From positions 248,001-312,000 of the forward strand of contig JAHLTZ010000020.1 in NCBI GenBank assembly GCA_025786725.1: 64,000 bases of DNA, in the 5' to 3' direction. Shown here one piece after another: positions 4,210 through 58,048 of this stretch (position 1 is its first letter; every line of letters starts with the position of its first letter). Made by a program: the position numbers and the translations under genes. This DNA comes from Syncephalis fuscata S228. Its lineage: Eukaryota; Fungi; Zoopagomycota. The notes under the pieces are model-generated. The model worked only from the letters and a program-made list of their open reading frames with translations. It did not search any database and was not told the origin of the DNA.

Positions 4210-4460
4210 GTTAAGTTTATAATGTATATAGCGCAATAAGGGGAATGAATGAAGTGTATTGGTGCATATAAATAATAAAATGTGTCTAATATATCATGGA
4301 ATGGAAATGATATAAATGTGTACTGGTTATATGTATACTGGATAATAAATCTACAATGATGAGTATTTGATGATTGATGTCACTCACCACCCATCATCAT
4401 GTTCAATAGATTGAATGTTAATAAAGTTAGTCATTTAACCATCAAATCATACTAAATAAT
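4210..4460 (-). repeat. AAATGACTA-family repeat copy (core plus partial body)
   Basis: Reverse complement reads aaatgactaac...aatctattgaacatgatgatgggtggtgagtgacatcaatcatcaaatactcatcattgtag, matching 16869 and 44320. Confidence 0.9.
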
Positions 4461-4658
4461 TAATAAGCCTTTTAATGTTTGCAGAAAGAAAGCTTATTTT
4501 TATTTAATTAATAAATGAGGTGATATATAGTAATGATACTTACGTGTTAATAATTAATCTATAAATAATAAGTGTTTAACCCGGCCATGCCAGTGAAATT
4601 ATTAACATTTCAAAAAACACAAATTTATTTTGGTTGCACGCGCTTTGTTTCATTTATC

Positions 4659-7140
4659 ATGCATGACGATCTCGTCCAAGAAAGGTGGCGGCTACTCGAC
4701 CACCAGTTACTCGACTGGTCATGTCAGCAACAGTTGGAAGAAGTTGCTACAGTAGATGTTACAGCAACTACAACTACAAACAAAGACCAATTGAATGCCC
4801 GCTCGCCACTACTGACCACATTACAAACACTATCGTCAACTGAACTAACTGACGACAACGTACCTGTACCTGAATCGGTACAAGAATATGCGCGTACACT
4901 GTTGAATACGCTTACTCTTTTACAGCATGCCGCGCAAACAAGCGAATGGCCTATGATGTCACTGACGTCACTGCTTGATGCCACAATGGGAGATGATACG
5001 GATGCCACGGCAAAACAACGACATCAGTTAGAGCACGCACGCTGGTGGCTTCTCGGTATGATTGTCAGCCTTATGCATACGCGCGTACTTGAAGAAGTTA
5101 TAACGGCCACGCAGCCACTATCGTCTGCCATGACTTACTGGGACCGACGAATCAACCATCCACGATGGGCAGCCATCCATTTACTGCAAAGTAAGTACAG
5201 ACATTGCCACTATCCAGTTAGATACTCATAAATGTATATTTTAAATTAGCTGCACCACTACGTGTCACTAGTTGGATTACACAGCTGCGATTATCCCAAT
5301 CATACTCAGCTACCGATACAGGAAGTCTATTTGGCCATGTGGGCATTTATATGCGCCATCTTATTAACCATCTACCACGATGGCCGGCCCAAGGGTGGAT
5401 ATCATTAGCGCAAAGAGAAGCCAATTTAAAACGAAATCGACTTAACGATACTCGTCGACGGTACGCTGTTGGCTTAGGCTATTTGGCTGAGCAAGGCCAG
5501 GTGGCTACGCTGGACTTCAACCAGCAAGCAACTGCAATGGCAACACCGATGAATAATGAACTGGATCACAAACATGCAGCAAGCAAACCAATTATGAGTG
5601 GTGTTAAGCAGATACGCTATTTGCTATCACAGCTATTGCATTGTACAAATCATACAATGCAAATTGTTTTAAAAGACGCCGTTGAAAAGAAAATACCATC
5701 TGACTGGTTAATTACAGTATCTGGTAAGTTCTAATTAATAGCAATAGTAAACTAACATTTATCAATAGATATGGAGTTGCAGCCATTAAGTGCTGAAGAG
5801 GTTCGATTTAGTTTATTAACACTAGAGGAAGATCTAGAAAAGTTTAAGCATAGCAATAGAAACATTTTACAAGTTGATGGACGGCCCCATTTTCTAACTC
5901 GGTATTGGCCAGTTTTAGGTGCTGGTCTAGTTATCGGACCGTCACTTTTTAGTTTAGCAATTGCACAGCGCCATTCAATTACTCGTTGGATTCAAGAAGC
6001 TGGCAATACAACGCGAGACTTTTTAATCGAATGGGTGTGGCGGCCATTGCAGAACATTTATGAGACGGTACGACATCGAGAAGGTCGACTTAATATTATG
6101 GGGAAAGCATCGTTGGCTGCCGATTTAGATGTAGGTTTAATTGACTAGTTGAACTGAATCGTTAACACATAATTAAAGTCTTTAGAACGAATGGTTGTAG
6201 ATTTGGCACAAGAAAAAGGCCAAATGAACGAACAGGAACTGGACCTTGTTAGGCAAACTGTCCGTGATGGCGATCTTTCTATAGTGCTACGTGAATATGA
6301 AAAGGAAATGAAGGTAAGTAGAATATGAAATAACATAATGAATTTAAAATATTAATCAAAAATAAATTATAATAGACGCCGTTAAAAAGCGCTTTACTAG
6401 GTAGTTATACAATAATAATAATAATAATAATAATAACAATATAATTATATATAATAATTCATTGTCACCAATTTAATAGGTCATTTAATCCGCGTTTTAT
6501 TAATTCAAGTTCAAAAAGGCAAAGTTGATCTTGAATTGGCCATGGCTGCACTTGATAAATTGTTGCGTGCTAATGAATTGAACTTTGCTTTTCTTACGGC
6601 GGCACCTGTTATTCTTATTACCTTTGGTCTTAGCCATTGGATTAATCAAACATGGCGTCGCCGCCAAGGCTTTTCCGCAGGTATTGCACGCCAAGAAGCA
6701 CGCGATTGGCTAAGGTAAGCAAGATGCTACTGGGCTGCAGCGCCACATGCAGCATTAATTCCGAATGGTCATCTAACACTCCATGTGGTGTCTATCATGC
6801 TTATTATGGCCATCACTATTCTAGACGTACTGATCGAGTCCTTAACCGATGCTATGATCCAATCTCCTTGAACGGCAATGGCAATGAACCGGTTCGTCAA
6901 AGTCGAATTTTGACGGCCAAGTCTCTTTATCAGGCTCATGGACTTGTTCTTTGTAATACATACCGACTTCGAGCATTGTTGCCTCGTCTAGCACTGAACG
7001 AGCAGATGCAGCGTGAATTTCTTATGGATTTACGCGAGCTAGAGAATACAGGCATGTCGACGGGCCAACGCCTTGGCACACTCCACCGAATGTATCGCAC
7101 CTACACCTTTTTAATGCCGTTAGCCATGAACTACGAATAA
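4659..7140 (+). CDS. NCA2: Nuclear control of ATPase protein 2
   Basis: [80 protein letters not shown]; multi-exon. Confidence 0.92.
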
Positions 7141-7234
7141 AATAGTATATGGCTTACTAAATTGCCAGTTCATACAATAAGTAGCGTTTAAGCAGCTTAT
7201 TAACCAATATTAATCTTTATGCAAAACAAAATTT

Positions 7235-7500
7235 AAAACTAAAGTATAGCAGTATGAATATAAGCAATAAACATCAATATTCTATATATTATCACGTTAA
7301 GTAAAATAATTTTTCCTTTTGCAAATATTAAATATTTTATTAACACAATTCAGAATAATGTTGTGCTAAATGAATATTTTAATGATATTTGCGTAATTGA
7401 ACTACACATTCGTTCTATTGAACATGGAACTAAGTGGTGAGCGATATTAAATATTAAATACTCATCATTATAGATTTATTATCCAGTATGCAATATCCTC
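7235..7500 (+). repeat. AAATGACTA-family core with upstream flank shared (inverted) with 20201-20336
   Basis: taaaactaaagtatagcagtatgaatataagcaataaacatcaatat...gttgtgctaaatga matches reverse complement of 20195-20336. Confidence 0.85.
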
Positions 7501-9916
7501 CATCCATTTATAGCATTTCTATTGTATATTCATACAACTATATACTATTTTATGATATACAGACAATATTATATTTGCTATAAATATTAAATCGCTTTAT
7601 TGCTTAATAAATAATATAGTTTCAATATTGCTATTTATACTTTTTCATTGTATATTTATGATATTCTATATAACTGTATAATACATTAGATATGCACTAG
7701 CTAAAACTGCTGTTCATTTGACACTATTTTGTTATTTATAAATATCAACTCATTTATTTTATTAAATCACTAGCAATACAATTGCGATGTTGTTATTCAT
7801 TCACATGCTTATCATTCTGCTATAGAATAGACATAAACTATTAATAAAATATTTATTGCTACCTGTATTTATAATTGACATGTTAGCACACTTCAGTATA
7901 GCTGGATGGACAATCGAGTCAACCGACTGGTGCAGATATGATTGTTTTGTGGACAAGTGTAGAATAAAAAAGGGACTATCATCTGATCTAGTGGTGAAAT
8001 GGCATCCGTGCACCAAAATGGTCCAGTCAGGCACAATACACCAATAAACAGTCGTCATGTACTCTACCAATATGTCCATTCTAATTGGTGGATATATTTT
8101 GGAATAAGCTTATAAGGTTGTGCTGAGCGTACTTTTGCTCATTACTTCGCTTTCTCTTGTTTCTAGTTGTAATATGCTGTAAACTGCTTGTTAATGGAAG
8201 CATCTGTTCTAGTAGCTATATCCAGTGGTGAGTGGTCTCCTTGTGGTTGATCACATATACTGCGTTATGCATTTGAGCTGTGTTAATGTAGAGTACAATA
8301 GTGCAGACTATGTGCTATACTAGCTCAGCAACTATATGGTTGCCTGTACTAGGCACTGTATACTGGCATAGTGCGGAGATATGTGGGATAGCAGGGTGTG
8401 CAGTGCTGTGTTTAGCAAGTCAGTATTGCTGTGCACTCCCCTCATGTTGATGCGGCGACCGTATGGGTGGTCATATGTTGTGCTCACTTGTATTGAACGT
8501 GCACTGGAGGTGTGTTTGATAGTCTTCAACTTGCTGAATACTATCATTGCACACTGGACTGGTGTGATATGTGGATTATTCGTACTGAATACCATGCATT
8601 ACACTGTTTACTTGTGGGTGTTGTTAAACGGTTGTAATAGAGCACTAGTCGCCATACCATTTTAGTTTTCAACTGCCGTGCTAGATACTCTATACAACAC
8701 TGACATAAACAAGGACTAACGACCGAAAACTAAATGGCATCTCTACTACTGATAATGTCATAGCGTAGACTGGTTGCTATATTACAATTATTTAATAACA
8801 TATCAGTATTGGCGATGTGTGTTTAGTTGTAATATGTTGTGGTGTTCATGTGTTCAGCTCTAGACATCAACTACAAATGGGTGAATCCATAGTTTGGTGC
8901 AGCTTATTGCTACGCTTGAATTGCCATGGCATCTTATAACATTTATTGAACAGCATGCCATCAAGATAGCAGCTAATATAGAGCTGTACGCATCCGACAA
9001 ATATTACTTACGCCCAAGTCGTAGTATTGCGGTACTCCAGGTGGACGTATAGTTGCTATATTAGCTACTATCTTGTTTAACAACTTTTAACAACATTTCT
9101 AGTTTATTTGTATAACAAATAACAACAATACACAAACAACTACACTCGTGTACACTATAAACTATACGCAAGAACAATCAACTAGATGTAGGTGCTTATT
9201 ACTACTAAACAATACTAACGCACTTTTATTATAGCTATTCAGCATTGGTGCCGGATCAACAAGTATATCTGAACTGCATTTGTTATCGACACAAATATTT
9301 TGCATGCAACTTACAATACCAACTATAGAATTCGTTGGCACAAGCATCGACAACAATACTGTATACTGTCGTTGGTACTATGTTTGGACTGGATTCTAAA
9401 TGAACCATATACCCATTTGGTTTATTACCAACATTAACTGCATTGCAATTGCGCATCTGCTAAATGCTTTGGTTTGATTGAAGTGGTGGTAATAAAGAGG
9501 GAGGTGGTGGGCATTATACATATATTACATTAAAATGGTAGATTTAATAAAGAAGTGTATGAGGTGTTTGCTGAAACAACATAACACTGTGACTCCATTA
9601 CTAGTTTGTCTAATGTTATGCTTATTATATTTATTAAAACTAAAATACTAATATGTTTATTTAATTAAAGTCATTGATACTTGAATGGCTAGATTACAAG
9701 TAGCTACATTCAATACTAAATTTACGCCAACTATTTTAATAATAATAACAATGATTGATTAATTTATTTGTCTTATTTATTAACATATAGCATAATTTAA
9801 AGAACAAATGATATTTTATAACATTCGCGTAATTGAACTACACATTTAATTTATTGAACATGGGGACAAGTGGTGAGTTTTATTTAATCATTACAGCATC
9901 ACATTATAGTATGATT
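7457..9916 (+). mobile_element. ~2.46-kb duplicated cassette A, copy 1 (non-autonomous, bounded by repeat modules)
   Basis: Near-identical direct copy at 41840-44312; both ends lie inside AAATGACTA-family modules; no transposase seen. Confidence 0.85.
7801..9598 (-). pseudogene. Degenerate gene relic inside cassette A copy 1
   Basis: Same reading as copy 2 (MESQCYV...), with more indels; GTAAGT...TTCAG intron retained. Confidence 0.55.
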
Positions 9917-10100
9917 TAATATTCAAATGACTATATTTAATTTAGTATATTTGTCAGTATCATTTTCAAGCAACTAAAGATACAAATGTATATGGTTATT
10001 TGCATGATATTGTTTCGTTTGCAAAAATATATTAATTCAATAAATATAGTAATAGTGGTTGTTTTTATAGATGCATAACAAAAACGCAGTTTACTACTTA

Positions 10101-11632: not shown

Positions 11633-11989
11633 GCTAGATGTCTATTATTGAGTAAAAGAAAAGGCAAGTAACAATGATGGTCATACCGTGAATAGCCGTT
11701 TTTCCAATGAATTTATAAAAACGGGCCTTTGCATCAGCGCTGCATACGTAGCCAAAAGAAAAACTGACTAGATTTGGCTGTAAATTTGATCAAAATAGCT
11801 AGTTAATGCTTATTTAAACTGTTATGGCCATTTACTAAAGTGCAGTACAATACATTCAAAAATTAATACGTTATAAACATGCTTTGTTTCTTGTCGTAGA
11901 TATCCTCTATATTTTTTAATATACCAAGTCTAGCATGTAAACTGACAAGCTACATACCTGTTTGTTGCATATTCAATAGCCTATTAATA

Positions 11990-15919: not shown

Positions 15920-16789
15920 GATACGCAATTACTATTATTATTATATCATTATTATTACTACTACTATCATATTATTATATTATTATCGTTCTTTTCTTCT
16001 TGTCATCGCTGTTAGTGAATAGAATTAAACTAATCATTTCCATCTACGACTTAATGAAGAACTGGGATGGTTAGTTTAATTGCATTATTTGACTTTTTTG
16101 CTTTTTTATTGTAGAAGTTGATTTGTATGTATAACTTCTTCCAATTCATCCACGTTTATGTCTTTTTTCTAGTGCGCATATTTCTGCGTAGTATGATTGC
16201 TTACTTGCTTTTACTATGGCTTCATAGATATACGAATCAATTTATATTTTATCATTTGTCACGATATAACTTGACTAATAAATACCAACAAAATAATACT
16301 AGCTTTAAAAACCGGTACTTTTAAATATAGATAACTAAAATGTGTAGCTATAATGAGTGCATGGTATACATGTATCATCGATGGGGTATATATTATGTAA
16401 TATCAAATGCCATTCATACTTTGGAGTTTATTCCTAGTATCTATTTGTTAATGTTGTCACTATTTTACAAATAAATTATTCTCTACTATATACTCACTAT
16501 TAATATCAAATAGCGTTTGTTTTTTATTGACAGTCTGTTTTATAATACGACTGATGAAGATGTAGTATGCATTTATGTAGTTTAAATAATCAAGTTGAAG
16601 TCTGCAAAAGCACAAGTTAGCAATAAAAATACAGCTTTTTATTAATAAAACATGATTGATTAAATAAATATACAGTAGAATCAATGTACAATGGAAACAA
16701 GATGAAGGGGTAGAGATTATATGCGTATTGAATAGCGATAGTGATGGATCTATAATGATGAGCACTTAATAGCTGATGTTACTTATCAT

Positions 16790-16868
16790 TTAGTTCTATT
16801 GAACATGGGGACAAGTGGTGAGTTTTACTTAATGATTACAGCATCACATTGTTTGTTATTTGGTAATC
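16790..16868 (+). repeat. Partial 120-bp module upstream of the left inverted repeat
   Basis: ttctattgaacatggggacaagtggtgagtttta...acagcatcacatt as at 9850-9905 and 44245-44300. Confidence 0.85.
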
Positions 16869-17633
16869 AAATGACTATTTTTAATAACACCCAATCTATT
16901 GAACATGATGATGGGTGGTGAGTGACATCAATCATCAAATACTCATCATTGTAGATTCATTATCCAGTATACATATATTCTCTATCTATTTATATCGTTG
17001 TTCGCATTATATCCCACACTACTATATACCGTTCTACAATATACTAAACACATTCTAATGTTTATACGCGGCACTATACTTTGCTCATTCGCTCATTACA
17101 TTATATGCACTATAACTTCAGCAGTGTTTCTAATCTTTGTCATTGTATCTTTATTCTATTATCTATTATTTATACACATTCAGTTATGCTCTAAGCAAAA
17201 CTGTTCGTGTTTTTATTCTAGCTTTTTATATGCAAATTCCGGCTAATGTCGCTTATCTGTTCATGTATATATGCCTAATAGCTTCAACACTGCCAATCGC
17301 CACTTGTATTGCATAATCATTATAGCGTATGTATCTTTATTATATAGTATTTAAAAGCTATCTGGAATTGCTGTCCATTTGTTCTAACTTTATTAATAAT
17401 AAAGCTCGGCTTACTTTGCCCATTTCAGCTATCAAAATATATATAATTGAAATCTATAACAAATATAGAAAGAATGTCTAATTTAATTACACGAGTATTA
17501 TTAAACATAGCCATTTGACTATCAATCACAGTATAACTAAATAATTAATCATCATATTTATTTCCACTCAGTACCATGTTCGACCAAACAATTTTTTAGT
17601 TCAACTATGCGAGTGTTATCAAATGTAGTTATT
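16869..17633 (+). mobile_element. ~765-bp MITE/foldback-like unit, left arm of the inverted pair
   Basis: Near-identical reverse complement at 19438-20200; forward module at left end, inverted modules at right end. Confidence 0.88.
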
Positions 17634-17694
17634 TAAAAGCACAAGGCAACAAATAATTATTAAGCAACTGTATTTATAAGCAATAAAGCATTTA

Positions 17695-18851
17695 TTACTG
17701 GTGTAACTGTTTAGACAAATGGAGCCAATATAGCAATGACAAAGAAATAGCTAATATGCCACCAATGCTGCTACTTTTTTTGTCACTACCATTGTTACCA
17801 TTGGTGTCATCACCACTATTTGTGGAGTTTGTAACATTCTTGACTGGCCATAATATTTGACCGCTACAGCTACTTTTTACAATTGTGGTGGATTTCTTAA
17901 AGTGAATATATCTCCTGAAATAGCAAAATAAAGTGTTGTTCCAATGATCTTGTCATTATCACACTGTAGACTAATGCCACCCTTGAACCTGACGTCTTTT
18001 CTAAAAGCATTTATAAACTCATCGATATTCCTTCGATCTCCAGGCTTAATACCAGCAGCAATAAAAGCATTGGAAGGACTATATATGTTGTGAAAAACAA
18101 TAGCTTGCTCAAAATAGTATGTCATATCTATGTTATCCTTGTAAAATCTGCCGTAACACTTGGGACTCAGCGTAGAGATACAGGTACCGTACTTTTTCCA
18201 TTCATGAGTCCTAATAATAAATTAATTAAAACACAATATGCATGAATTGAAACTTTATTACCAAAGTCCACTATTATATCCTTTTTTTGAGGGCCAATAC
18301 GTTATCATGCTGTCATATCTATACGGGTTATTTGACTGGATTTTAGCACCAGCACTCTTGTACTGACGTTCTGAATCACATCCATCTTTAGGTGGAAGTT
18401 CACCATTACTATAATTTAGTGTTAATTGGCTATTTATCATTTATAAGTTGCACAGCTTACCAACCAGTGGGATGAAATCCATGAATGGTAAAATTATTGG
18501 CTGGCCCTAATGTTGTGTCCCACTAGTAATTGTATTAAAACACCGCCATTTATTACTGTTATTATTATAACTTACTTGTAACACTAGTTGAAGAAGACCA
18601 TATTTTGGAACACAACAGAGGTCAGTAGTAGTCGCGTTGGCACTACACGAATAAATCTCTGGACAATTATTTTCGTGTCGAAGGTAACTAACTGGTATGT
18701 CATTTATATTACCAATTAGTATAAAAGCGTCAACCAGCGACAGACTAAGCCCTGACAAAAGCAAAAGGAATAATAGTAGCGACGATAATCTATTATAGAT
18801 TTGTATTGGCAAGGCAAATAAGACAAATGAAGCCTGACTCAATTGCTTCAT
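17695..18851 (-). CDS. Secreted ribonuclease T2-family protein with atypical active site; frameshift near 17890
   Basis: Hydrophobic N-terminus, SCS...DLCCVPKYGL, QWDTTLGPANNFTIHGFHP (CAS I), WTHEWKKYGTC (CAS II), SCSGQILWPVK, hydrophobic C-terminal tail. Confidence 0.9.
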
Positions 18852-19437
18852 GTTTAATCAGCTTACAGTAATATAATTAAAAGGAAATTATGCTGAGAAA
18901 TACAAAGCTAATATAGCGTAGCAATAAATGGTAACTAAAATGAGCAAATAAAAGGGATAATGCGGTGATAAAAGATAATACACCGAGTGCTAATTTATTA
19001 ATAAAATTCCGGTTTTTAACTGACTGATGAGTGGATCATGCACGTTATTCTATGTCTTTGTGTTTGAAACGGGCAACGCTTTAATCTTGATAATGACATA
19101 ATTAGCTTGTCATATTATAATGGCTTCTATCAAGGATTGGATTAATAAACATATTCTTTTACATTTATGTTTTATTATTAATATATTGAACGGTGATGAA
19201 AATGTGTAAATAAGAAGATAAAGCTTTTTCTTAGTTTCATTAAACAAACTTGAAAGCTGATGCCAAATAAAATACGAATGAAACAGATATCAATACTACA
19301 ACTTTAACATATGCTAAAATGGCTGAAAAGGCAATAGTAGAGCAAAGAGCAGATTATTCGAATAACAGAAAAGAGTTGGATGTGTGGCAATTTCAACCAT
19401 GCAAATAACAGCATATCACTAAGAATAGTGGTATTCC

Positions 19438-20200
19438 AATAACTACATTTGATAACATTCGCATAGTTGAACTAAAAAATTGTTTGGTCGAACATGGTAC
19501 TGAGTGGAAATAAATATTGATGATTAATTATTTAGTTATACTGTGATTGATAGTCAAATGGCTATGTTTAATAATACTCGTGTAATTAAATTAGACATTC
19601 TTTCTATATTTGTTATAGATTTAATTATATATATTTTGATAGATGAAATGGGCAAAGTAAGCCGAGCTTTATTATTAATAAAGTTAGAACAAATGGACAG
19701 CAATTCCAGATAGCTTTAAATACTATATAATAAAGATACATACGCTATAATGATTATGCAATACAAAGTGGCGATTGGCAGTGTTGAAGCTATTAGGCAT
19801 ATATACATGACAGATAAGCGACATTAGCCGGAATTTGCATATAAAAAGCTAGAATAAAAACACAAACAGTTTTGCTTAGAGCATAACTGAATGGTATAAA
19901 TAATAGATAATAGAATAAAGATACAATGACAAAGATTAGAAACACTGCTGAAGTTATAGTGCATATAATGTAATGAGCGAATGAGCAAAGTATAGTGCCG
20001 CATATAAACATTAGAATATGTTTAGTGTATTGTAGAATGATACATAGTAGTGTGGGATAGAATGCGAACAACGATATAAATAGATAGAGAATATATGTAT
20101 ACTGAATAATGAATCTACAATGATGAGTATTTGATGATTGATGTCACTCACCACCCATCATCATGTTCAGTAGATTGGATGTTATTAAAAATAGTCATTT
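19438..20200 (-). mobile_element. ~765-bp MITE/foldback-like unit, right arm of the inverted pair
   Basis: Reverse complement of 16869-17633. Confidence 0.88.
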
Positions 20201-20587
20201 AGCACAACATCATTTTAAATTGTTAATAAAATATTTAATATTTGCAAACAAAAAAACTGTTTTACTTAATAAACGTGATAATATATATAATATTGATGTT
20301 TATTGCTTATATTCATACTGCTATACTTTAGTTTTAAACTAAAAGTAATAATAATCTGATATTTACAACGTCTCCTTCAAAACATCATTATATGCGAGAG
20401 AAGTTTGTAGGGATGATTACAGCAAAGTGATGCTAAAAGGCATCTAAGTTGCATAGATATTCAGTTTGTTAATTTTTTAATTTAATAAGCTTTATTATTC
20501 TTTATTGCTTTAATAAACAGTGTGTTTATTCGCTAACAAAATAAAGCGGTATGGCATTATAAATACACAAAAACAATTTATTTTTTA

Positions 20588-22546: not shown

Positions 22547-22656
22547 GTCTATAACACAATTATACAGATAAAAACATGAAAGTGTAAAAGTTATTTAATC
22601 GATGCAATATTTTTAATTTAAAGTATTTAATATTGTCATCCAATTATCACCTTTCC

Positions 22657-23781: not shown

Positions 23782-23830
23782 ATAAACGATTAGCTATTTT
23801 AAAGATGTTTATTGACGTAGATTCATATTA

Positions 23831-30377: not shown

Positions 30378-30759
30378 TGTTGAGTTCTTGTTTAGTGTCT
30401 ATATTTTTGTAATCCTATAAAAATTATAGCTGTAAAAGTAAGAATCAATAGTTATAAAAAACGAGCTTTGTGCAAAAAAAAAACAAAAAACAAGTCAGAT
30501 TATTTGAATATTTATAATAGATTGCAACAAACTACAATTGGTTTAGCTATTATTTATTTCAGATATAAAAGTTATATGCACTGGGGGTGACCAGCGTGGA
30601 AGTAAAACAAGCTAATTGAGCGATAACTCAAAAACGGAATATGATAATTACATATAAGGATTGAGGAGCTAACAGACATTTAAATGCCGTTATTTTTTTT
30701 ATCTACTATCCAAGTTGCCCAGTTGATGGTTTAATGCAAAATAGTAACAAAAATTTACA

Positions 30760-31200
30760 TATTTAGAAGCATGATTAGAATAGCAATTCCATTGAGCATA
30801 TATGCATGATCAATGAGTGAAATTAGTCGACATTTATTAATAATAAATCTAAAACAGAAATAAAGCAGTTTTTGGATAGAGCAATGCGGAATAAGTATAA
30901 AATGATAAATATACGATAATAATACATATAAAATAATGTTAAAGTTACAGTACATATAATGCAATAAGTGGACTGAATAAAGTATACTAAAGTATATAAA
31001 CAATAAAATGTGTCTAATATATCGTAAAATGATATAAGTAAATGGTGGATACATGCATATTGAATAATGAATCTATAATAACGAGTATTTGATGATTGCT
31101 ATTACTCACCACCCAGCATCATGTTTAATAGATTGGATGTTATTAAATGTTAGTCATTTAACCACCAAACAAACACTAAATGCGATGCTGTGATGATTAA
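30760..31200 (-). repeat. AAATGACTA-family copy (core plus body)
   Basis: Reverse complement: tgtttggtggttaaatgactaacatttaataacatccaatctattaaacatgatgctgggtggtgag... Confidence 0.85.
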
Positions 31201-31607
31201 ACAAATATAATGTAATAAATAACATGGTATACATTGACCCAATAAGCAAAATGAGCAAATGTTTATAATAAAGCTATAATCAAAAGCTAGTAAACTATTA
31301 AAAATAAATGATAAGATAAACATATAGTGCTATAGAAAACTGTCAAGTGGAAAATAATATAGCATGCTGATAGCATACAATCGGCTAGACTATCATATGA
31401 TTACATAGTTATATGACTAATTACACAGTTATATTGTCAACCAGCTATTTTGGTTATCGTGCAAGTTAATGTACAGCTATATGACCGGCTATAAATTTAT
31501 ATAGATATACAGATAAATAAACAAACAGCTATAAGACGGTATATATCACGCCATAGCTAATTTTATTTACCAACAATTGAGTATTGTTTAGTGTAATTTG
31601 GAGGACC

Positions 31608-33061
31608 AAATGACTAACATCTAATAACATCCAATCTAGTGAACATGATGATGGGTGGCGAGTGACGTCAATCATTAAACACTCGTCATCATAGATTCGT
31701 TATTTAGTATGCATATATCCACCATTTACTTATATGATTTCCATTATATCTCATATTGTTATGTATCATTCTACAATATACTAAACACATTTTATTTATT
31801 ATATGTTCCAATATACTTCATTCGACCCACTTATTGCATTATTTATGCTATAATTTCAACAGCGTTATTTATACCTGTCTATTGTACATTTATTCTATTT
31901 TATATCATTCTATTGTATAATATTAACATGTTATTTGAAACTTCTGTTTGTTTAATACTAGCTTGATTACTAATAAATTTGAATTATTACATTTATTTGC
32001 TCATGCATATATGTACCGTTTAATTATCTGATAAACAAATCAGTTAATGTGAATTGACTATGATTTTGATGCTAGTAGGACAAACCAATGGATATCCACA
32101 ATAATAGCAAGTTTAAGCAAAATAGGAACATAATATATTAATGAGTATGCAAATAGAAAAGAAAGCTAAAAATAAAACAGCGTAAAAAAATAACATAGTA
32201 CTGTAGTGATGATATATGCGTACTAGATAATGAATATACAATAATAAATATTTTAATGATTGATACTATTCAGCATTCAGTTTCATGTTTAATAAAACGG
32301 ATATGTAGTTAGTTGCATGAAAAATGCTTAGCACAAATGCTGACACATAATGCTTAGCACAAATGCTGGCACATAATGCTAGCACATGCTCATTTCCCTC
32401 ATTACGTTATATGCACTATAGCCTCAACATCACTTATCACACTCTTTTTATTATATGTTCATTCTATTCTATATCATTCTATACTCTCCTAGCCTTTCTT
32501 TATCCAATACTATTTTTATTTTTGTTCTAGCTCTATTATTAATAAATGTTGACTAATTCCGCTCATTGATCATGCATATATGTTCAACAACTTGAACATT
32601 GCTAATCTCGTTCAATATTGCATGTTCATTATAATGTTTATTATTTTATTATATACTGGCTATACGCTATCTATAACCGTTGTCGGTAGGGTTCCAACTC
32701 TTTTATTAATAAAATTGACATATTGCACTTAGTTTGTTTACTGAGTTATATTGATAGAACAAATAATATGAATATGAACCGAGTTATGTTTTATTAAGAT
32801 TATTTATAATAAACTAGATTGTGTCAATTAGTTATGATTTTAATGTTAATAAGCAAAGTGACGGGTATACATAGCAATAACACATAATGTGATAATATAT
32901 ACATGCTGGATAATGAATCTACAATGATGAGTATTTGATGATTGACGTCACTCACCGCCTATCATCATGTTCAATAGATTAGATGTTATTAAAATAGTCA
33001 TTTAACCACCAAACAAACAATTTGATGGTGTAATGATTAAATAAAACTCACCACTTGTCCA
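31608..33061. mobile_element. Compound foldback/MITE-like unit of the AAATGACTA family
   Basis: Forward core at 31608; inverted cores at ~32220-32320 and 32895-33003 (about 110-bp imperfect inverted termini); second body copy at ~32400-32860. Confidence 0.75.
32323..32390 (+). repeat. 26-bp tandem repeat, ~2.5 copies
   Basis: aatgcttagcacaaatgctgacacat / aatgcttagcacaaatgctggcacat / aatgctagcacatgct. Confidence 0.9.
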
Positions 33062-33348
33062 CCAAATTACATATATGCTTAATAAATTAATAATAATAAT
33101 ATTTAACTATGTAATAAACAATGCTATCGATAGTGCATTCCTTTGTTATTCTACTTGTGACCACAAACTATATCTATCAGCATTTTTATTGAATTATTAG
33201 AACATTTGAACATGGATGAAATACATATAATGATATAAACATTCAAATCATTGCTGTCTTAAGTATTTTAGTATTGAATTCAAATGGCAAACACATTACA
33301 TCACTACAATGGTTTATACTTCTTATAATCGTTTATTCAAACAATAGA

Positions 33349-36296: not shown

Positions 36297-37320
36297 GATG
36301 CTATACAAATGATTTAAGTTAAAACTACAAAAGTTATAGGCTGGTTAGATGAATGGATGAACGCTGAAGGTTTCGAGTGATCTGGTGGTGAGAGGTGGAA
36401 AGAAAAGCTAATATGTCCAATAAGAGCAGTAACAAGCGTAATAATAAAACTTTTAACTGATTTGTTACTAAGATTATTTATACAAAATGTCGTTGTACAA
36501 TGAGTCACACTTTATACATTAGTATGTAGCTTAGTCCCTATGGCAATAGCAAATAGTGATTGTGTTGACATGACTCACCCTTTAACGGATCGGATATATA
36601 TACATGCACAACTATGTAGACAAGGAGCGTGGCGTGTCTGTGAGTCAGATTGAAAGCAAGGTAGCGTGCGAACAAATCACTGTCGCTCCTACATACTGTT
36701 CAGGTCTCTTTTCCCTGCTACGTGAACCATGTCAGTACTTTTAATTGCTCATAAACAAATTCAGACAGTTGATATGGTAATTACAAGTAACAAGTACATA
36801 TGACGTATATAGATTGTGTATGATATCATTTATTAGTTACTATGGTATACTTATTTTTATCTAATAATCTAACATTCATGGGATGGTATTTTGTATGATA
36901 CAATAATTGTTATAAACATGGTACACTTGTACATAAAATATCATCCATTTCATTCAACTTTTGAACTATCTTTTTACACATACATAGCAGTATATTGGCA
37001 TTTCTCTATTTCAAATAAATTATTAACTGAATTGTCTATATAATACTAAATGGTGTTTGCTAGTATTTACTATACACTGTGTTATAGCGCATTTTATATA
37101 TAAATAATAAAAACCATTTAATATTTCTAATGTTTACAAACAATTTACACTGTTGTATCGGCTTCTTTTAATGTAGTACTAGTAAAACTCATAATAATAC
37201 ATTATACTTACAATACAAATATTAGCACAACGTTAATCACATAGCACGTAGTGTCATTTAATGTTATTATAAAATTTGTTTTATAAACAATTTATTAACT
37301 TTTATTGTAATTCGGGGGTC

Positions 37321-38570
37321 AAATAACCACATTTAATAATACTCGCGCAATTGAACTAGATATTTGTTCTATTGAACATGGGGACGGGTGGTGAATGATA
37401 TTAAAGTTTTAAATGTTCATTATTATAGATTTATTATCCAGTATGCATACATCATTTCTATCGTACATTCCCACTATTATATAGTATTCCATCTCTAAAA
37501 AGCTACCAGTGCATAGCTAGCACAATCATTATACTGGCGACTGTGTACATACAACATTAGCAATAGTAGTATATTGCACTGCTGTACTGACACTAAAGGA
37601 TTGTTGAGTGACTATACTAGCAGTGCAACCAGCTACTGTTGTATGCGTTCCAATGCTGTACATAATGACTGAAGTGGTTATACGCTACCAAACTCACTGC
37701 ATGTTTTGGTTTGCCATAGATCACCACTGCAGTCGTTTTAAAAGTAGTAGTAGATTGCACTTTTAGCACGGCCACTGAATAACATTTCAGTACCATACAG
37801 TGCGATCTACTACTGTTGCTACTGTATATGCTATTGCCAGCACGATCTATAGTGGCGATCAATAGCAAAGCAAAGCACATAGTCGCTACATTCGTCGTAC
37901 TAGCAGTTGTGCATATACAACAGCGTAATCTCCAATAATCCATAGCATAAACAAAGCACACAGCGAGATTTAACAGCATACCCTCAACATAACATAAAAT
38001 AAACCAGGAATGCACTTATCGTGTCAAAGAGGCTGTCAACAACAATGATCGGAGTGATGAAGGTGATTTGTAAAAAGGTCAGATTACAAAAGAGCAATGC
38101 AAGGACATAGTGTAAATAGTGTTTGTACTCAACTAGTAGTCAGTCAACTACTGACACTATCTAAATAGTATATATAGAGTGTACAAGTATATGCAATGTA
38201 TATATGCTATCAAGTGTGAAGAAAGAGAAAGGGAAATGTGATGACGTAGATTGTGAGCTGTGAGCCTGTCAGTCAATATTTATAAACAGCCGAGTTTAAT
38301 TCATTAATAAATGCAATGTGAAATAATAAAAGTCAATCTACCCAACATGTCAGTACATCATAGAACAGATTAATAGTAAATGAATAAATGCATTAAAAAT
38401 AAAAGCCATTTGACACCAAAACTACTCATTATCATAGAACATATACTCAGTATATTAAAAGATCAATTAAATATAATAAAAGTCATTTACACTCAAAAAC
38501 ACTCATTATATAGAATGTTTGTCAGTATAATAGCGAATGCATTAAATAATAAAAGTTATTTGATACTAAA
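37321..38570. mobile_element. Cassette B copy 1: forward module at left, inverted degenerate ~75-bp tandem modules at right, gene-relic cargo
   Basis: Core module at 37321-37445; 37684-38550 is nearly identical to 57121-57990. Confidence 0.75.
37480..38135 (-). pseudogene. C-to-T hypermutated gene relic in cassette B
   Basis: One frame: VDSLFDTISAFLVYFMLC*GYAVKSRC...RSCWQ*HIQ*QQ**IALYGTEMLFSGRAKSAIYYYF*NDC...ALERIQQ*LVALLV*SLNNPL. Confidence 0.7.
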
Positions 38571-38767
38571 AGTTAGTGTAGTACAATACATATCAACTGT
38601 TACTACATTATAAAAGATGGAACAATAATGTACATAGTAAATAGGATAAGAAATATAGTGTTTATTTTATAATATATAAATAATAACATACAAATAGTAT
38701 ACAGCCACCTAAGTATTTAATATGATTAGTGCTATGATTTGCGTAATTGTTAGTGAGTACTTGCCTT

Positions 38768-40794
38768 TTAATTTAAAGTGGGCCTTTTTAAGGCGGGCTT
38801 GTCGGAAGGAAAGTGCCCGTTTAGCAACACCTTGTTTTGTATTTGGAATAGCGACTGCGTTTTGGCTGACGCTGCTGTTTTCTTGCTGCTAATCCATTGT
38901 TGAACCAAGAACAGTTCAATACCTGGGCGGCAGTATACCGTGTGGTACTATCTAGATCTAGTAATTCTTCCATCAATTGAATGACTGCAGTGTATTAGTT
39001 GATGTTAATAAAAAATATATAACTTACCTTGATTACTTAACCCGTTGATTCTTCCCCGGCCAAATGTGGGCGGATTCTGTAGTATGCGCCTCATATACAT
39101 AGATTGGGTCTTTACTATGCTATATGGGCAGCGTTCTAATTAATAGTATTAAACAGTTAGTGTTTGCTTTTGTTTTTGTTTGCACTTACCCAGTAACATC
39201 GTATGGAGCGTTGCTCCCAAGCCCCACATATCGGCGGGCTTTCTATGCTCCTTAGCATTCAGCAATGCTGGAGGGAGAATGCATGCCATCCCAAAGTCTG
39301 TAAATACGACTCTGGGACCCCCCTGGCCACCAAACAACAGCATGTTGTCGGGCTATTTAAATGTTAGCAATAATTACAAATATTTAATAAATACTTACTT
39401 TGATATCTAAATAACAATAGTAATAATAGTAATAATAGTAATAATAGTGATTAGTGATTATATTAATTAATAGGTTAATGTATTTACCACGATGAATGAT
39501 ATTCATGCTATGAAGGTGCTAATAGAATGTTAGTATTTTAATTAATGTTTTATACTAGTACTTACTTGAATACCTTCAAGCAGCTGTTTAAAGATATATT
39601 TTGCTTCCATCTCTGGAAGTGGGGCTTTTGAGACGATGTGATTAATTAGATCACCGCCTGTTGCGTACTCAAGAGACAAGTACGTGTTCAGGCGGTGACC
39701 GCACCATCTAAAAAGCCTATTACGCCAGGGTGGTTACCCACCGCACGTAATGTGGCGACTTCATTATTGAAGCTTTTAAGGCCGCTTCCTTTTGATGATA
39801 CTTTGACCGCAACACGTTCGCCTGTGCTGCGGTCAAATCCCATGTAGACTTGGCCAAAAGCGCCCCTATTATAAATAATTAGTAGCTAATTAGTTAGTTT
39901 AATTTATTACTTACTCTCCAATGGGCTTATCAACAAGCATGAACTTCTGGTTGATTTTCTATAACATTAATAAAATAATATTAGCAATATTTAAATATAA
40001 TTGTAAACTTACCTTTTCGTACTCTTTGCTGTCTTCTATTTTTACAGGCTTATAATGTTTAATGATGTAGATATTAAACGTTACTGCCACGCATAATTAG
40101 AAATAATCATAAATAATCACTTGTCACTTACTATTGTGGCCAGGTATTGTGACAACACAATCACCGGCAACTCTTCTTGACTCATTGGCACTCAATTCAA
40201 TGTTATTGACTAAAATAATTGTTAGTAAAATAATTACTATTACTTGTTTAAACTAACCCATTAAAACATCTAGTTCAATGTTCTGAATACTAATTAGTAT
40301 TAATAATGTTAAATGCCCATTCACTTACTTTGAATGTAATAAAACCATTCGACTATAATCATTCATAGTTAGTACCAGTTTATCAATGCAAATATTATAC
40401 TTACTACTAAAAATTTAAAGCATTGATCTGGCAAAGATGCAGTGGCCAGGCAGACGTTGCTGTTTAAATGTGCATGATATTAGCTTATTACTTATATATT
40501 GTTTAAATAATTACCAGTCTTGATCGGACCCAACAGTATAACTCTTATTTTTTATTATTGAAATTTCTAAATAAACACTAGTTAGATAGATTTATATTTA
40601 GCAATTTTTAACTTACTTTTAGATCCTGCTTCATGGATTCTAGCCCATACGACAATAGCAATGCATATTGCTGGAGAAAAGGTGTACCAGTTTACTGAAA
40701 CGTTATAAAACATTAAATCCTCATCACTTGGAAGATTTAATGACTGTTGAACAGCAACAGCAACCGGAACAATTGGAATGGAAGTGGAAAACAT
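38768..40794 (-). CDS. CAMK-group kinase with probable degenerate FHA N-terminus (Chk2/Dun1/Mek1-like), many tiny exons
   Basis: IGE|GAFGQVY, RVAVK, LEYATGGDL, HLHSMNIIHR|DIK|PDNML, TDFGMA, KPADMWGLG; one frameshift near 39690; the FHA call is tentative. Confidence 0.8.
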
Positions 40795-41757
40795 TATTAT
40801 AAAATAATGAATTCAAATATTCAAATAATAAAATTCCAAATTGAAAGTTATGAGCTGGGAGTAAAGCAGTAAGAAAAGGAAAGATAATTGTGTATTACTT
40901 TTTTCGTTTATTTAAATACATTTACAATAGCACAATATCAGTTAATATAAAAAGTGATACTGCAATAATAGTGTAGACAAACAATATACTCAAAAAGACA
41001 CAAAGAACTTATACAGATGATTGATCTATTTTTAGTGTGATAAATGTGTAAATTACTAAGTTACAATCAAAGCGCCAACCGCAACAAATAGAGAAACAGC
41101 CACAAAGCAAGAGTTGATGCCATTGAATGTTACAACACAAAGAAAAAACTAACGGCATGCTGCAAATTTTACAATGGCAATGAAATAAGAGCATTGTTTT
41201 GCATGATGCATAGTAGCGACAAAGTATTGTTCTTAAATGGTGCAGAATGGCATCAGATCATTGGTTCCAGGTGATGCAAGTGGCATCAAACTATTGTTCT
41301 CAAATACCATTTTGCGTCATCCTATTGATACAATCTTGCAAAGAATGACACTGATAGCAGAACATTGTTCCTAGATAACACAAAATAACATCATTGATAC
41401 AGCCATACAAAAAGCAACAGTTTATTTGTTTAAAAATAGAACATTCAGAACAATGCTTTGTCTTATTCAAGATATGGCATTTTATGATCACATGCTAAAC
41501 TAGAAATTATACCGGGAACTGGATAATTAGCTTTTCTCGTCTTTGTATGCTGTAGGCTAAACAAAGTCTATATAGAAGAACGGCCATACATATAATAATT
41601 AACACTTGTAAACATATTTTAGCAAGCTGAAAAGAGTATGTTTTTATTTATCAAAATTTCAAGCCATCTTATACACTAGTTTAAGTAGTTATGTGGAAAT
41701 AATTGGTAAATAAATAGTAAAATAAATAAAGATAACATTTTTGCAAACATTAACCAT

Positions 41758-41870
41758 TTAGTATGATTTAGTAATTAAATGACTATATCTAATAACATTT
41801 GTTTTATTGAATATGATGGTGGATGATGTCAGGGTTCATAATACTTATTATTATAGATTGACTATCCAGT
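41758..41870 (+). repeat. AAATGACTA-family core, degenerate
   Basis: ttagtatgatttagtaattaaatgactatatctaataacatttgttttattgaatatgatgg. Confidence 0.75.
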
Positions 41871-44312
41871 ATGCAATATCCTCCATCCATTTATATAATT
41901 TCCATTGTATATTCATACAAATATATACTATTCTATGATATACAGACAATATTATATTTGCTATAAATATTAAATCGCTTTATTGCTTAATAAATAATAT
42001 AGTTTCAATATTGCTATTTATACTTTTCATTGTATATTTATGATATTCTATATAACTGTATAATACATTAGATATGCGCTATTTAAAACTGCTGTTCATT
42101 TGACACTATTTTGTTATTTATAAATATCAACCCATTTATTTTATTAAATCATTAGCAATACAGTTGCGATGTTGCTATTCATTCATATGTTTATCATTCT
42201 GTTATGGAATAGACATAAACTATTAATAAAATATTTATTGCTACCTGTATTTATAATTGACATGGAAGCGCACTTCAGTATAGCTGGATGGACAATCAAG
42301 TCAACCGACTGGTGTAGATATGATTGTTTTGTGGACAAGTGTAGAATAAAAAAGGGACTATCATCAGATCTAGTGGTGAAATGGCATCCGTGCACCAAAA
42401 TGGTCCAGTCAGGCGCAATACACCAATAAACAGTCGTCATGTACTCTACCAATACTGTCCATTCTAATTGGTGGATATATTTTGGAATAAGCTTATAAGG
42501 TTGTGCTGAGCGTACTTTTGCTCATTACTTCGTTTTCTCTTGTTTCTAGTTGTCAATATGCTGTAAACTGCTTGTTAATGGAAGCATCTGTTCTAGTAGC
42601 TATATCCAGTGGTGAGTGGTCTCCTTGCTGGTTGATCACAATATACTGCGTTATGCATTTGAGCTGTGTTGAATGTAGAATACAATAGTGCAGACTACTG
42701 TGCTATACTAGCTCAGCAACTATATGGTTGCCTGTACTAGGCAGCTGTATACTGGCATAGTGCGGAGATATGTGGGATAGCAGGGTGTGCAGTGCTGTGT
42801 TTAGCAAGTCAGTATTGCTGTGCACTCCCCTCATGTTGATGCGGCGACCCGTATGGGTGGTCATATGCTGGTGCTTACTTGTATTGAACGTGCACTGGAG
42901 GTGTGTTTGATAGTCTTCAACTTGCTGAATACTATCATTGCACACTGGACTGGTGTGATATGTGGATTATTCGTACTGAATACCATGCATTACACTGTTT
43001 ACTTGTGGGTGTTGTTAAACGGTTGTAATAGAGCACTAGTCGCCATACCATTTTAGTTTTCAACTGCCGTGCTAGATACTCTATACAACACTGACATAAA
43101 CAAGGACTAACGACCGAAAACTAAATGGCATCTCTACTACTGATAATGTCATAGCGTAGACTGGTTGCTATATTACAATTATTTAATAACATATCAGTAT
43201 TGGTGATGTGCTGTTTAGTTGTAATATGTTGTGGTGTTCATGTGTTCAGCTCTAGACATCAACTACAAATGGGTGAATCCATAGTTTGGTGCAGCTTATT
43301 GCTACGCTTGAATTGCCATGGCATCTTATAACATTTATTGAACAGCATTGCCATCAAGATAGCAGCTAATATAGAGCTGTACGCATCCGACAAATGTTAC
43401 TTATGCCCAAGTTGTAGTATCGTCGGTACTCCAGGTGGACGTATAGTTGCTGCATTAGCTGCTATCTTGTTTAACAACTTTTAACAACATTTCTAGTTTA
43501 TTTGTATAACAGATAACAACAATACACAAACAACTACACGCATGTACACTATAAACTATACGCACGGAACAATCAACTAGATGTAGGTGCTTATTACTAC
43601 TAAACAATACTAACGCACTTTTATTATAGCTATTCGAGCATTGGTGCCGGATCAACAAGTATATCTAACTGCATTTGTTATCGGACACAAATATTTTGCA
43701 TGCAACTTACAATACCAACTATAGAATTCGTTGGCACAAGCATCGACAACAATACTGTATACTGTCGTTGGTACTATTGTTTGGGCTGGATTCTAAATGG
43801 ACATATCTGGTTTATATTACCCAACACTAACTGGCATTGCTATTGCGCATCTGCTAAATGCTTTGGTTTGATTGAAGTGGTGGTAATAAAGAGGGAGGTG
43901 GTGGGCATTACACATCTATTACATTGAAATGGTAGATTTAATAAAGAAGCGCATGAGGTGTTTGCTGAATCGACATAACACTGTGACTCCATTACTAGTT
44001 TGTCTAATGTTGTGCTTATTATATTTATTAAAACTAAAATACTAATATGTTTATTTAATTAAAGTCATTGATACTTGAATGGCTAGATTACAAGTAGCTA
44101 CATTCAATACTAAATTTACGCCAACTATTTTAATAATAATAACAATAATTGCTTAATTTATTTGTTTTATTTATTAACATATAGCATAATTTAAAGAACA
44201 AATGACTATTTTGTTACATTCGCGTAATTGAACTACACATTTAATTTATTGAATATGGGGACAAGTGGTGAGTTTTATTTAATTATTACAGCATCACATT
44301 ATAGTATAATTT
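41840..44312 (+). mobile_element. ~2.47-kb duplicated cassette A, copy 2
   Basis: Direct near-identical copy of 7457-9916. Confidence 0.85.
42183..43992 (-). pseudogene. C-to-T hypermutated multi-exon gene relic inside cassette A copy 2
   Basis: MESQCYVDSANTSCASLLNLPFQ...HLADAQ*QCQ...QPKQ*YQRQ...VGI|phase-0 intron|IYLLIRHQ...DGNAVQ*ML*DAMAIQA*Q*AAPNYGF; ~300-codon last exon readable in one frame. Confidence 0.65.
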
Positions 44313-44319
44313 GGTGGTC

Positions 44320-44560
44320 AAATGACTAATATCTAATAACATCCAATCTATTGAACATAATGATAAGTGGTGAGTGACATCAATCATCAAATACTCATCA
44401 TTGTAGATTCATTATCCAACATGCATATATTCAGTACACATATACTTTATTCACCTATATCATTCTATTCTATTATAGACACATTTTATTTATTACAGGC
44501 TTCAATACACTTTATTTGTTTTATTAATCACATTATACACATTATGGTTTTACCATGCTA
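44320..44560 (+). repeat. AAATGACTA-family copy (core plus partial body)
   Basis: aaatgactaatatctaataacatccaatctattgaacataatgataagtggtgagtgacatcaatcatcaaatactcatcattgtagattcattatcc. Confidence 0.9.
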
Positions 44561-58005: not shown

Positions 58006-58048
58006 AGCTACAAAATTTAATAATAATCTACTAATACATAAAATACTA

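What the first reader, a model, noticed from the sequence alone, without database searches (positions are those of the whole stretch)
4210..44560. Modular AAATGACTA repeat family that marks accessory islands and swaps flanks at a fixed junction
Seen: AAAT(G/A)(A/G)CTA-headed modules at about 4436(-), 7368, 9806, 9925, 16869, 17516(-), 19437, 19556, 20200(-), 31159(-), 31608, 33003(-), 37321, 41777, 44200 and 44320. Tandem copies are spaced 119-120 bp. Two downstream types (…cgcgtaattgaactacac… and …ccaatctattgaac…) combine with two upstream types (…gttgtgct| and …ttggtggtt|), and homology switches at AAATGA. For example, 20200 shares its downstream part with 16869 but its upstream part with 7368. 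Copies are intergenic and mostly sit beside F-box, RNase, pseudokinase and relic genes. Inference: either a non-autonomous foldback/Pack-type transposon family or a recombination-site scaffold that shuffles effector cassettes.
Basis: partly seen in the sequence, partly recalled or inferred. Interest (0 to 1): 0.8.

Follow-up and report, generated by a model that had tools for sequence, protein, structure and literature searches.

The report
Old foldback-type repeat with 120-bp subunits
The AAATGACTA modules are the unit starts of an abundant, old, non-coding inverted-repeat element of this fungal-type genome, and their "swapped flanks" come from a variable number of 120-bp subunits plus copy-to-copy gene conversion and block duplication, so this is ordinary repeat biology and not a dedicated cassette-shuffling system.

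Summary
All listed sites are unit starts of one repeat family, and tandem units lie 118-120 bp apart. The family has at least 473 core copies in the 29.4-Mb genome. It fills 7.9% of this window against 2.3% of a systematic sample of the same contig.

A typical copy is a 0.55-1.1 kb non-coding element. Its 130-260 bp inverted arms face head-out around a conserved, asymmetric centre. Each arm reads T-A or T-B-A: a terminal piece, an optional 120-bp B unit, then the A unit. B-tail to B occurs about once in 73 heads.

Real mosaics exist. Some near-identical tracts start exactly at AAATGACTA. All six such pairs compare a T-A arm with a B-A arm. In 20 of 26 near-identical pairs the tract runs through the head. 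Other breakpoints lie at +7 to +20, +89, +102 and -139.

The likeliest cause is ectopic gene conversion and block duplication that stop where good homology ends. I found no target-site duplication, no transposase and no recombinase.

The flanked "cassettes" are themselves multi-copy families. Arms also abut housekeeping genes (MMM1, NCA2, DIS3L2).

The scan probably met this family before on other DNA (s1-634623, s1-640370), with the same verdict.

The parts
3988..4519 (-). Solo arm (T-A, head at 4436) plus inner part. It lies between an MMM1-like ORF and the NCA2 gene.
7232..7367 (+). Terminal piece T plus outer flank. It is 85-100% identical to 20201-20338 in reverse.
   Evidence: (I21)
7368..7754 (+). 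Arm with a hybrid unit (20-bp insert, B-type middle, A-type tail). From 7457 it is the left end of cassette A.
7457..9941 (+). Cassette A copy 1. It is 96% identical to 41840-44337 and belongs to a multi-copy family with no long ORF.
9775..9941 (+). T + B unit (head 9806) + a second head (9925). Family sequence stops 9-17 bp after that head.
16690..16868 (.). Older debris: an A fragment on the - strand (16690-16801) and a partial B unit on the + strand (16788-16868).
16869..17634 (+). Whole head-to-head element copy 1, with the A head at 16869 and B-like heads at 17516(-) and 17634(-). It is a window-specific inverted copy of copy 2.
   Evidence: (I1)
17640..19430 (-). Loop carrying an expressed RNase T2 gene (about 17706-19045, 51-nt and 55-nt introns). 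Two paralogs lie on contig C317.
19437..20200 (-). Head-to-head element copy 2. It is in the ancestral position, because both C317 paralogs have a copy there (84%).
20201..20338 (-). Terminal piece T and outer flank of copy 2, shared with 7232-7367.
30791..31205 (-). Arm (head 31159) plus inner part.
31572..32013 (+). Arm (T-A, head 31608) plus inner part. It is head-in relative to the previous arm, so the two are ends of different elements.
   Evidence: (I2)
32202..33063 (.). An arm fragment (32202-32314, -), a 26-bp tandem repeat (32323-32386), then centre plus right arm (32389-33063, head 33003 -, 85% to L019).
37261..37486 (+). T + hybrid unit (head 37321), upstream of cassette B.
37684..38571 (+). 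Cassette B, 97% identical to 57121-58014. Its last 630 bp is another dispersed repeat with 77-bp tandem subunits.
41720..42128 (+). T + degenerate A unit (head 41777) plus inner part. It is the left end of cassette A copy 2.
44141..44543 (+). Full arm T-B-A (heads 44200 and 44320) plus inner part, about 300 bp upstream of the DIS3L2-like gene.

Best explanation
The modules belong to one old, abundant, non-coding repeat family. Its basic element is 0.55-1.1 kb long, with 130-260 bp inverted arms facing head-out around a conserved asymmetric centre. I infer that it is a relic non-autonomous TIR or foldback-type DNA element. Each arm is built from one or two tandem units of about 120 bp. A terminal piece T comes first, then an optional B unit, then the A unit. 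AAATGACTA is the first word of each unit. The last roughly 12-20 bp before it are shared by T and by the B tail.

The 'modular flanks' are therefore T-A versus T-B-A arms. On top of that, copies exchange sequence by ectopic gene conversion, and they lie at the ends of duplicated blocks. This is shown by near-identical tracts in unrelated contexts. These tracts usually run to the edge of the well-conserved head-to-head region. They stop where one partner has T and the other has a B tail, which makes the junction look fixed at AAATGA.

Shown here: the anatomy, the unit grammar, the mosaics, the copy numbers and the multi-copy cassettes. Inferred: past transposition, conversion as the cause of the mosaics, and possible extra fragility at the base of the hairpin the arms can form.
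For: The family is real and large. A 33-nt core pattern with up to 3 mismatches gives 473 hits against 0 for the reversed control. First-look candidates number 983-1226. At least 40 near-full-length copies are 79-86% alike.

In an unbiased sample of contig C113, 5 of 7 loci are head-out pairs.

Grammar over 73 heads: B-tail to A 25, T to B 29, T to A 19, B-tail to B about 1.

Five of about 65 classified units are hybrids with other breakpoints.

All six pairs with a core at least 95% identical but an unrelated upstream compare T-A with B-A. The other 20 of 26 near-identical pairs keep identity through the head.

L013 and L015 are 100% identical for 355 bp starting at AAATGACTA, with different outer pieces.

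Recent tract ends fall at offsets 0, 0, -15, -16, +7, +13, +14, +20, +89, +102 and -139.

The inverted pair around RNase T2 consists of two whole head-to-head copies that are 97.5% alike. The C317 paralogs have only one copy, at 84%.

Cassettes A and B are multi-copy families whose homology ends inside or beside arms.

Core identity to the consensus has a median of 90.4% and the changes are mostly transitions, as expected for old neutral copies.
Against: I found no target-site duplication and could not fix the outer termini. At least two terminal variants exist, with extensions of up to 500 bp. Transposition is therefore inferred, not shown.

No autonomous partner was found. Only MULE was searched.

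Most measured breakpoints fall within 20 bp of a head. The edge-of-homology explanation was not tested against a simulation, so a real hotspot is not excluded.

Twenty of the loci were chosen as best hits and many are block duplicates, so the pairs are not independent.
Confidence: 0.7

Rival explanations
1. The T/head boundary is a true mechanistic hotspot. The arms form a hairpin or cruciform, breaks arise at the stem base, and repair by template switching duplicates the neighbouring gene cassettes.
For: Many independent tract or block ends lie within 20 bp of a head. The stem edges of the inverted arms lie 18-46 bp from heads. Three different multi-copy cassettes end there.
Against: The same pattern is expected if conversion tracts are longer than the 0.3-0.9 kb of homology. 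Other ends lie at +89, +102 and -139, and from -32 to +63 on the left side of cassette A. There is no direct evidence of breaks.
Confidence: 0.12
2. The family is a still-active MITE mobilised by a transposase encoded elsewhere. The heads are subterminal binding sites.
For: The element has TIR structure, hundreds of dispersed copies with unrelated flanks, and 68 perfect 33-nt cores.
Against: Full copies are only 79-86% alike. Every near-identical pair is either a block duplicate or differs in its terminal piece. No target-site duplication was seen. The 15 MULE hits are not linked to arms.
Confidence: 0.08
3. The modules are sites of a dedicated site-specific recombination system, integron-like or Crypton-like, with AAATGACTA as the crossover core.
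For: Some exchanges start exactly at the 9-mer.
Against: Breakpoints are spread over many offsets. Twenty of 26 near-identical pairs run through the head. Hybrid units have breakpoints inside the unit. No recombinase was linked to the arms. The cassettes are repeats or intact genes with their own context, and the RNase T2 paralogs have one copy only.
Confidence: 0.04
4. The core is kept because it works for the host, as part of an abundant non-coding RNA or as a promoter or terminator module.
For: A 1728-nt contig of the probable RNA run X1, at depth 1934, ends in B tail plus A core. The core contains ATG runs followed by GGTGAGT.
Against: The core is no better conserved than the rest of full-length copies: about 82% pairwise against 79-86%. 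At the RNase T2 locus the transcript stops short of both arms. There is no Rfam or tRNA match. No match was found outside this genome.
Confidence: 0.06

Closest known systems
Foldback-type elements (Drosophila FB and Galileo, Arabidopsis FARE, sea-urchin TU); from my own knowledge
   Same: The inverted arms are built of tandem subrepeats. Unit number and length vary between copies. Copies are non-coding, and the elements are associated with rearrangements and duplications.
   Different: The arms are short (130-260 bp, 1-2 units) and surround a conserved, non-palindromic centre of 200-650 bp. No target-site duplication or P-type or other transposase was found. Copies are old.
MITEs near effector genes, e.g. 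Fusarium 'mimp' elements; from my own knowledge
   Same: They are short, non-autonomous TIR repeats sitting in intergenic DNA of gene-family-rich regions.
   Different: mimps are about 220 bp with short TIRs, a TA duplication and a known impala/Tc1-mariner partner. Here the arms also flank housekeeping genes, and no partner or duplication is known.
Repeat-mediated segmental duplication and concerted evolution of inverted repeats (Alu-flanked duplications, Y-chromosome palindromes); from my own knowledge
   Same: Duplicated blocks end inside dispersed repeats. Inverted copies 1.8 kb apart are far more alike (97.5%) than their paralogs (84%).
   Different: The repeat here is a fungal-type foldback element. 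The conversion mechanism is inferred from sequence alone.
Integron attC / site-specific cassette systems
   Same: A conserved short word lies at many junctions between variable segments.
   Different: There is no fixed crossover nucleotide, no linked recombinase and no promoterless ORF cassettes. The junction word is simply the start of a tandem subunit.

Membership tests
Non-autonomous TIR / foldback-type DNA element (MITE-like) | Terminal inverted repeats on a short element | tested here: met
   Head-out inverted arms of 78-149 nt at 79-94% complementarity, plus B units, in L003, L009, L024, L031 and L019. Five of 7 unbiased loci are such pairs.
Non-autonomous TIR / foldback-type DNA element (MITE-like) | No coding capacity, high copy number, dispersed | tested here: met
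   There are 473 core matches against 0 for the control, on many contigs. At least 40 near-full-length copies exist. The elements hold no long ORFs.
Non-autonomous TIR / foldback-type DNA element (MITE-like) | Target-site duplication of fixed length at the ends | tested here: inconclusive
   A scan of 16 elements for 8-9 bp direct repeats at mirrored offsets gave only scattered AT-rich matches. The outer ends are not sharp. The 99% palindrome in L038 has no flanking repeat.
Non-autonomous TIR / foldback-type DNA element (MITE-like) | Related autonomous element with a transposase | tested here: inconclusive
   Only MULE (PF10551) was searched. It gave 15 hits, none inside the long head-out pairs on C90, C343 or C345. 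Other superfamilies were not searched, and no more genome DNA could be fetched.
Non-autonomous TIR / foldback-type DNA element (MITE-like) | Empty sites or insertion polymorphism | not testable with these tools
   No relatives of this genome are on hand. The runs found are small contig sets of the same organism. No back-to-back T-T sites exist in the genome.
Pack-type cargo transposon | The same cargo between the same two ends at several loci | tested here: not met
   The RNase T2 loop has two paralogs on C317, each with one flanking copy only. The second copy in the window is a local 97.5% inverted duplicate.
Site-specific recombination cassette system | Exchange at one fixed position of a core site | tested here: not met
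   Tract ends fall at 0, -15, -16, +7 to +20, +89, +102 and -139. The left ends of cassette A range from -32 to +63. Twenty of 26 near-identical pairs pass through the head.
Site-specific recombination cassette system | Linked recombinase gene | not tested
   None was seen in the window.
SINE or known structured RNA | tRNA, 5S or 7SL-derived head, or an Rfam family | tested here: not met
   There are no Rfam matches in the window at gathering score, nor in four elements at E up to 0.1, and no tRNA.

The most novel reading that the evidence does not exclude
The boundary between the terminal piece and AAATGACTA is a real break or crossover hotspot. The cause could be cleavage at the base of the hairpin formed by the inverted arms, or an unknown nuclease. 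On this reading, the hotspot drives duplication of neighbouring genes and non-coding RNA genes (RNase T2, cassette A) in this fungus-parasitic fungus.
Probability: 0.12. Interest if true: 0.6.

Novelty: new member of a known kind. Interest (0 to 1): 0.3.

Why it matters
The finding explains a conspicuous pattern of this genome without invoking a new system. A single old foldback-type repeat makes up about 2% of the sampled contig and 8% of this window. It supplies the homology at which blocks are duplicated and arms are homogenised. That matters for annotating the many 'cassettes', 'palindromes' and 'caged genes' the scan keeps reporting in this genome, since most are likely products of the same process. 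The family itself appears undescribed. A literature search found no paper naming repeats of Syncephalis, and two core words have no match in the metagenome collection.

Tried and rejected
1. Promoter or first-exon idea (ATG runs followed by GGTGAGT in the core). At the RNase T2 locus the RNA contigs cover 17706-19045 and do not reach either arm.

2. The head as the true transposon end, with T as a pre-existing target. T pieces are homologous across copies, and no back-to-back T-T site exists.

3. Simple deletion of the B unit as the source of T-A arms that are near-identical to B-A arms. The T pieces of L013 and L015 are of different types.

4. Target-site duplication search by mirrored k-mers, by TIR alignment and by the profile of the outer extension. 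No consistent end was found.

5. A larger composite (520-bp left extension + element + 475-bp right extension, in L001, L011, L019 and L031) as the 'real' element. The left extension abuts a shared gene-like flank, so these are block duplicates.

6. Search for relatives in metagenomes with two core words: 0 hits.

7. MULE as a partner: not linked.

8. Rfam and tRNA: nothing.

10. A formal test of enrichment beside secreted or lineage-specific genes was not possible without an annotation.
Full report
SCOPE. The window is G000:C113:248001-312000 of a 29.4-Mb, 371-contig eukaryotic assembly with about 35% G+C. Earlier notes of this scan name the organism Syncephalis fuscata. I did not verify that.

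OBSERVATION. AAATRRCTA occurs 19 times against 6.8 +/- 2.6 expected, and none of 100 shuffles reached 19. Four have degenerate heads (7368, 9806, 19437, 37321). One more unit start lies at 17634(-), and there are fragments at 16690-16801(-) and 32206-32314(-). Tandem starts are 118-120 bp apart here and 116-122 bp apart in other loci. Family-derived DNA fills 12 stretches totalling 5.1 kb, which is 7.9% of the window. The figure is 2.3% for a systematic sample of the same contig (every other 10 kb, 198 kb, present in 7 of 20 pieces).

ANATOMY OF THE FAMILY. A 161-bp copy used as query gave 1226 first-look candidates in the genome. A 33-nt core word with up to 3 mismatches gave 216 + 257 = 473 places, against 0 for the reversed control, and 68 of them were perfect. 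In 20 loci fetched around best hits, and in the unbiased sample, the usual form is an inverted pair with the heads facing out. It spans 0.55-1.1 kb, occasionally 1.5 kb. The arms that pair are 78-149 nt at 79-94% complementarity, plus the B units where both sides have them. The 200-650 bp between them is not palindromic but is conserved between copies. At least 40 near-full-length copies are 79-86% identical to either of two reference copies. The A core is 90.4% identical to its consensus at the median (range 73.6-96.7). Changes are 464 transitions against 211 transversions, and C is the most often changed base. The core is therefore not better kept than the rest of the element. There are no long ORFs, no Rfam family and no tRNA. 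Two core words have no exact match in the metagenome collection.

THE UNIT GRAMMAR. Each arm reads, from outside in: a terminal piece T (roughly 40-110 bp, in several variants), an optional B unit, then the A unit that runs on into the inner part. A and B both start with AAATGACTA and share TATTGAACATG and GTGGTGAG. B has a 20-bp insert that repeats ATTGAAC 21 bp later, and it ends in a tail whose last 12-20 bp resemble the end of T. So B plus A is a 120-bp tandem duplication reaching from about -20 to +100 around the head. Over 73 heads the combinations are B-tail to A 25, T to B 29, T to A 19 and B-tail to B about 1. About five of 65 classified units are hybrids, either insert plus A-type rest, or B-type front plus A-type tail as at 7368 and 37321.

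REAL MOSAICS. Some junctions are true exchanges.

(a) 16869-17633 is 97.5% identical to the reverse of 19438-20200. Both ends of each arm fall on heads: the A head outside, and a B-like head at 17634(-) and 19437(+) inside. Each 'arm' is therefore a whole head-to-head element. The four flanking pieces all differ. The 140 bp outside 20200 are 85-100% identical to the flank of 7368.

(b) L013 and L015 are 100% identical for 355 bp starting at AAATGACTA, with unrelated outer pieces.

(c) L005 against L004 and L006: a 99.4% block ends 15 bp outside the far A head.

(d) Elements of two unrelated block families (L004 type and L007/L012 type) are 96-97.6% alike. The tracts begin 7-20 bp inside the outermost heads.

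(e) Other ends lie at +89 and +9 to +17 (cassette A in the window), +102 (L032) and -139.

Among 26 arm pairs whose cores are at least 95% identical, 20 keep that identity through the head into the 60 bp upstream. The six that do not are all a T-A arm compared with a B-A arm. Where the sequence upstream of a head is homologous in both partners, the tract does not stop at the head. It stops where homology stops. Tracts of several hundred bp or more, laid on 0.3-0.9 kb of homology, are expected to end at its edges. I did not simulate this, so an additional hotspot near the head remains possible. The base of the hairpin that the arms can form is one candidate cause.

THE 'CASSETTES'. The 1.8-kb loop between the two inverted copies carries an RNase T2 gene on the minus strand. 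Its last exon matches PF00445 at E 2.6e-12, searched as a single exon by reference. I did not search a joined model. Contigs of run X1, probably RNA, cover 17706-19045 and skip 51 nt with GT..AG ends on the minus strand, and also skip 55 nt. They do not reach either arm. The loop has two paralogs on C317, at 85% and 76-78%. In both, homology starts at window 17640, six bases from the inner head of copy 1. It runs through one element copy on the right at 84% and ends about 28 bp short of the A head at 20200. The left flank 15950-16700 is unique. Copy 2 therefore came with the cassette. Copy 1 is a local inverted copy of it, or an older resident copy overwritten by it. Debris at 16690-16868 favours the second.

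Cassette A (7457-9941 and 41840-44337, 96%) belongs to a family with at least 11 copies at 91-96% and about 25 older ones at 69-85%. Against copy 2, twelve young copies end at window 44190, 10 bp before the B head. That ending may be one inherited boundary. Their left ends scatter from -32 to +63 around the head at 41777, and three copies run further left. Cassette B (37684-38571 and 57121-58014, 97%) ends in a 630-bp dispersed repeat with 333 candidates. It often lies next to cassette A on other contigs. These are multi-copy non-coding families, not effector genes.

NEIGHBOURS. Arms lie between genes. Their neighbours include two F-box genes, the RNase T2 gene and orphans. They also include an MMM1-like ORF, NCA2, a protein kinase and a DIS3L2-like exoribonuclease. 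Perfect cores are clustered: 10 of 68 lie on C113, which is 1.6% of the genome, and 7 lie on C328, mostly in block duplicates. I could not test enrichment beside secreted or lineage-specific genes without an annotation.

READS. Three small contig-only runs of the same organism were found. In the two probable DNA runs, summed depth on the A core is about 1240-1330, against 4-5 on unique contigs. This fits hundreds of copies at least 90% alike, although the tool warns that this is no copy number. X1 holds a 1728-nt contig at depth 1934 that ends in B tail plus A core, so at least one copy lies inside an abundant RNA. I could not locate it.

WHAT WAS NOT FOUND. There is no consistent target-site duplication and no sharp outer end. 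Some copies share a further 475-520 bp on either side, but those are block duplicates next to a shared gene-like flank. No transposase was linked. MULE gives 15 hits, none inside the long head-out pairs seen on C90, C343 and C345. No back-to-back T-T site exists, which speaks against T being a pre-existing target.

VERDICT. The family is best read as a relic foldback-type or MITE-like repeat. Its arms are made of 120-bp units, and it now evolves by block duplication and copy-to-copy conversion. The 'fixed junction' is mostly the start of a subunit and the edge of good homology. A dedicated cassette-shuffling system is not supported.

Earlier follow-ups of this scan on other DNA of the same genome reached matching conclusions. 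Note s1-634623 described a dispersed foldback repeat of about 1000 copies and rejected a recombination site. Its '21-bp spacing' fits the ATTGAAC pair of the B unit. Note s1-640370 described gene pairs reshuffled inside copies of a miniature-transposon end. I reached my reading from my own alignments, and I treat these notes as agreement, not as independent evidence.

Noticed in passing
window 17706-19045 (-): The RNase T2 gene is expressed in run X1, with 51-nt (18210-18260) and 55-nt (18523-18577) introns. Two paralogs lie at C317:411305-413083 (85%) and C317:420341-422080 (76%).
   Followed up: partly
window 7457-9774 and 41840-44140: Cassette A has no long ORF, at least 11 young copies (several in tandem-like arrays on C224 and C357) and about 25 older ones. 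It may be the abundant non-coding RNA gene family that earlier notes describe. A 1728-nt X1 contig at depth 1934 ending in B tail plus A core would fit its 3' end.
   Followed up: partly
window 37938-38571 and 57375-58014: A separate dispersed repeat of about 630 bp with 77-bp tandem subunits, in at least 30 copies at 83-90% (333 candidates). It is related to the 475-bp right-hand extension seen beside some elements.
   Followed up: partly
L038:2127-3162 (C113:394127-395162): A 99% palindrome with 437-nt arms and a 162-nt loop. Its arms hold a B-type unit and a 219-bp outer piece. No flanking direct repeat was seen.
   Followed up: partly
window 32323-32386: A 26-bp tandem repeat (2.5 copies, 94%) sits exactly between an arm fragment and the centre of the next element.
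   Followed up: no
L001, L010, L011, L029, L031 (C221, C204, C113:~168-170 kb, ~205 kb): Blocks of at least 3 kb at 96-100% identity carry the element plus both extensions and a gene-like left flank. This indicates recent segmental duplication within and between contigs.
   Followed up: partly
window 4572-7140 (+): The NCA2 (ATP synthase regulation) gene is split over several ORFs. An MMM1-like ORF lies at 2668-3189. These are housekeeping genes directly beside arms.
   Followed up: no
genome-wide: There are head-out core pairs 3.6-4.4 kb apart at C90:432036/435635, C343:5657/9880 and C345:32631/37009. Their contents are unknown and could be cargo, a second RNase-like arrangement or an autonomous copy.
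   Followed up: no
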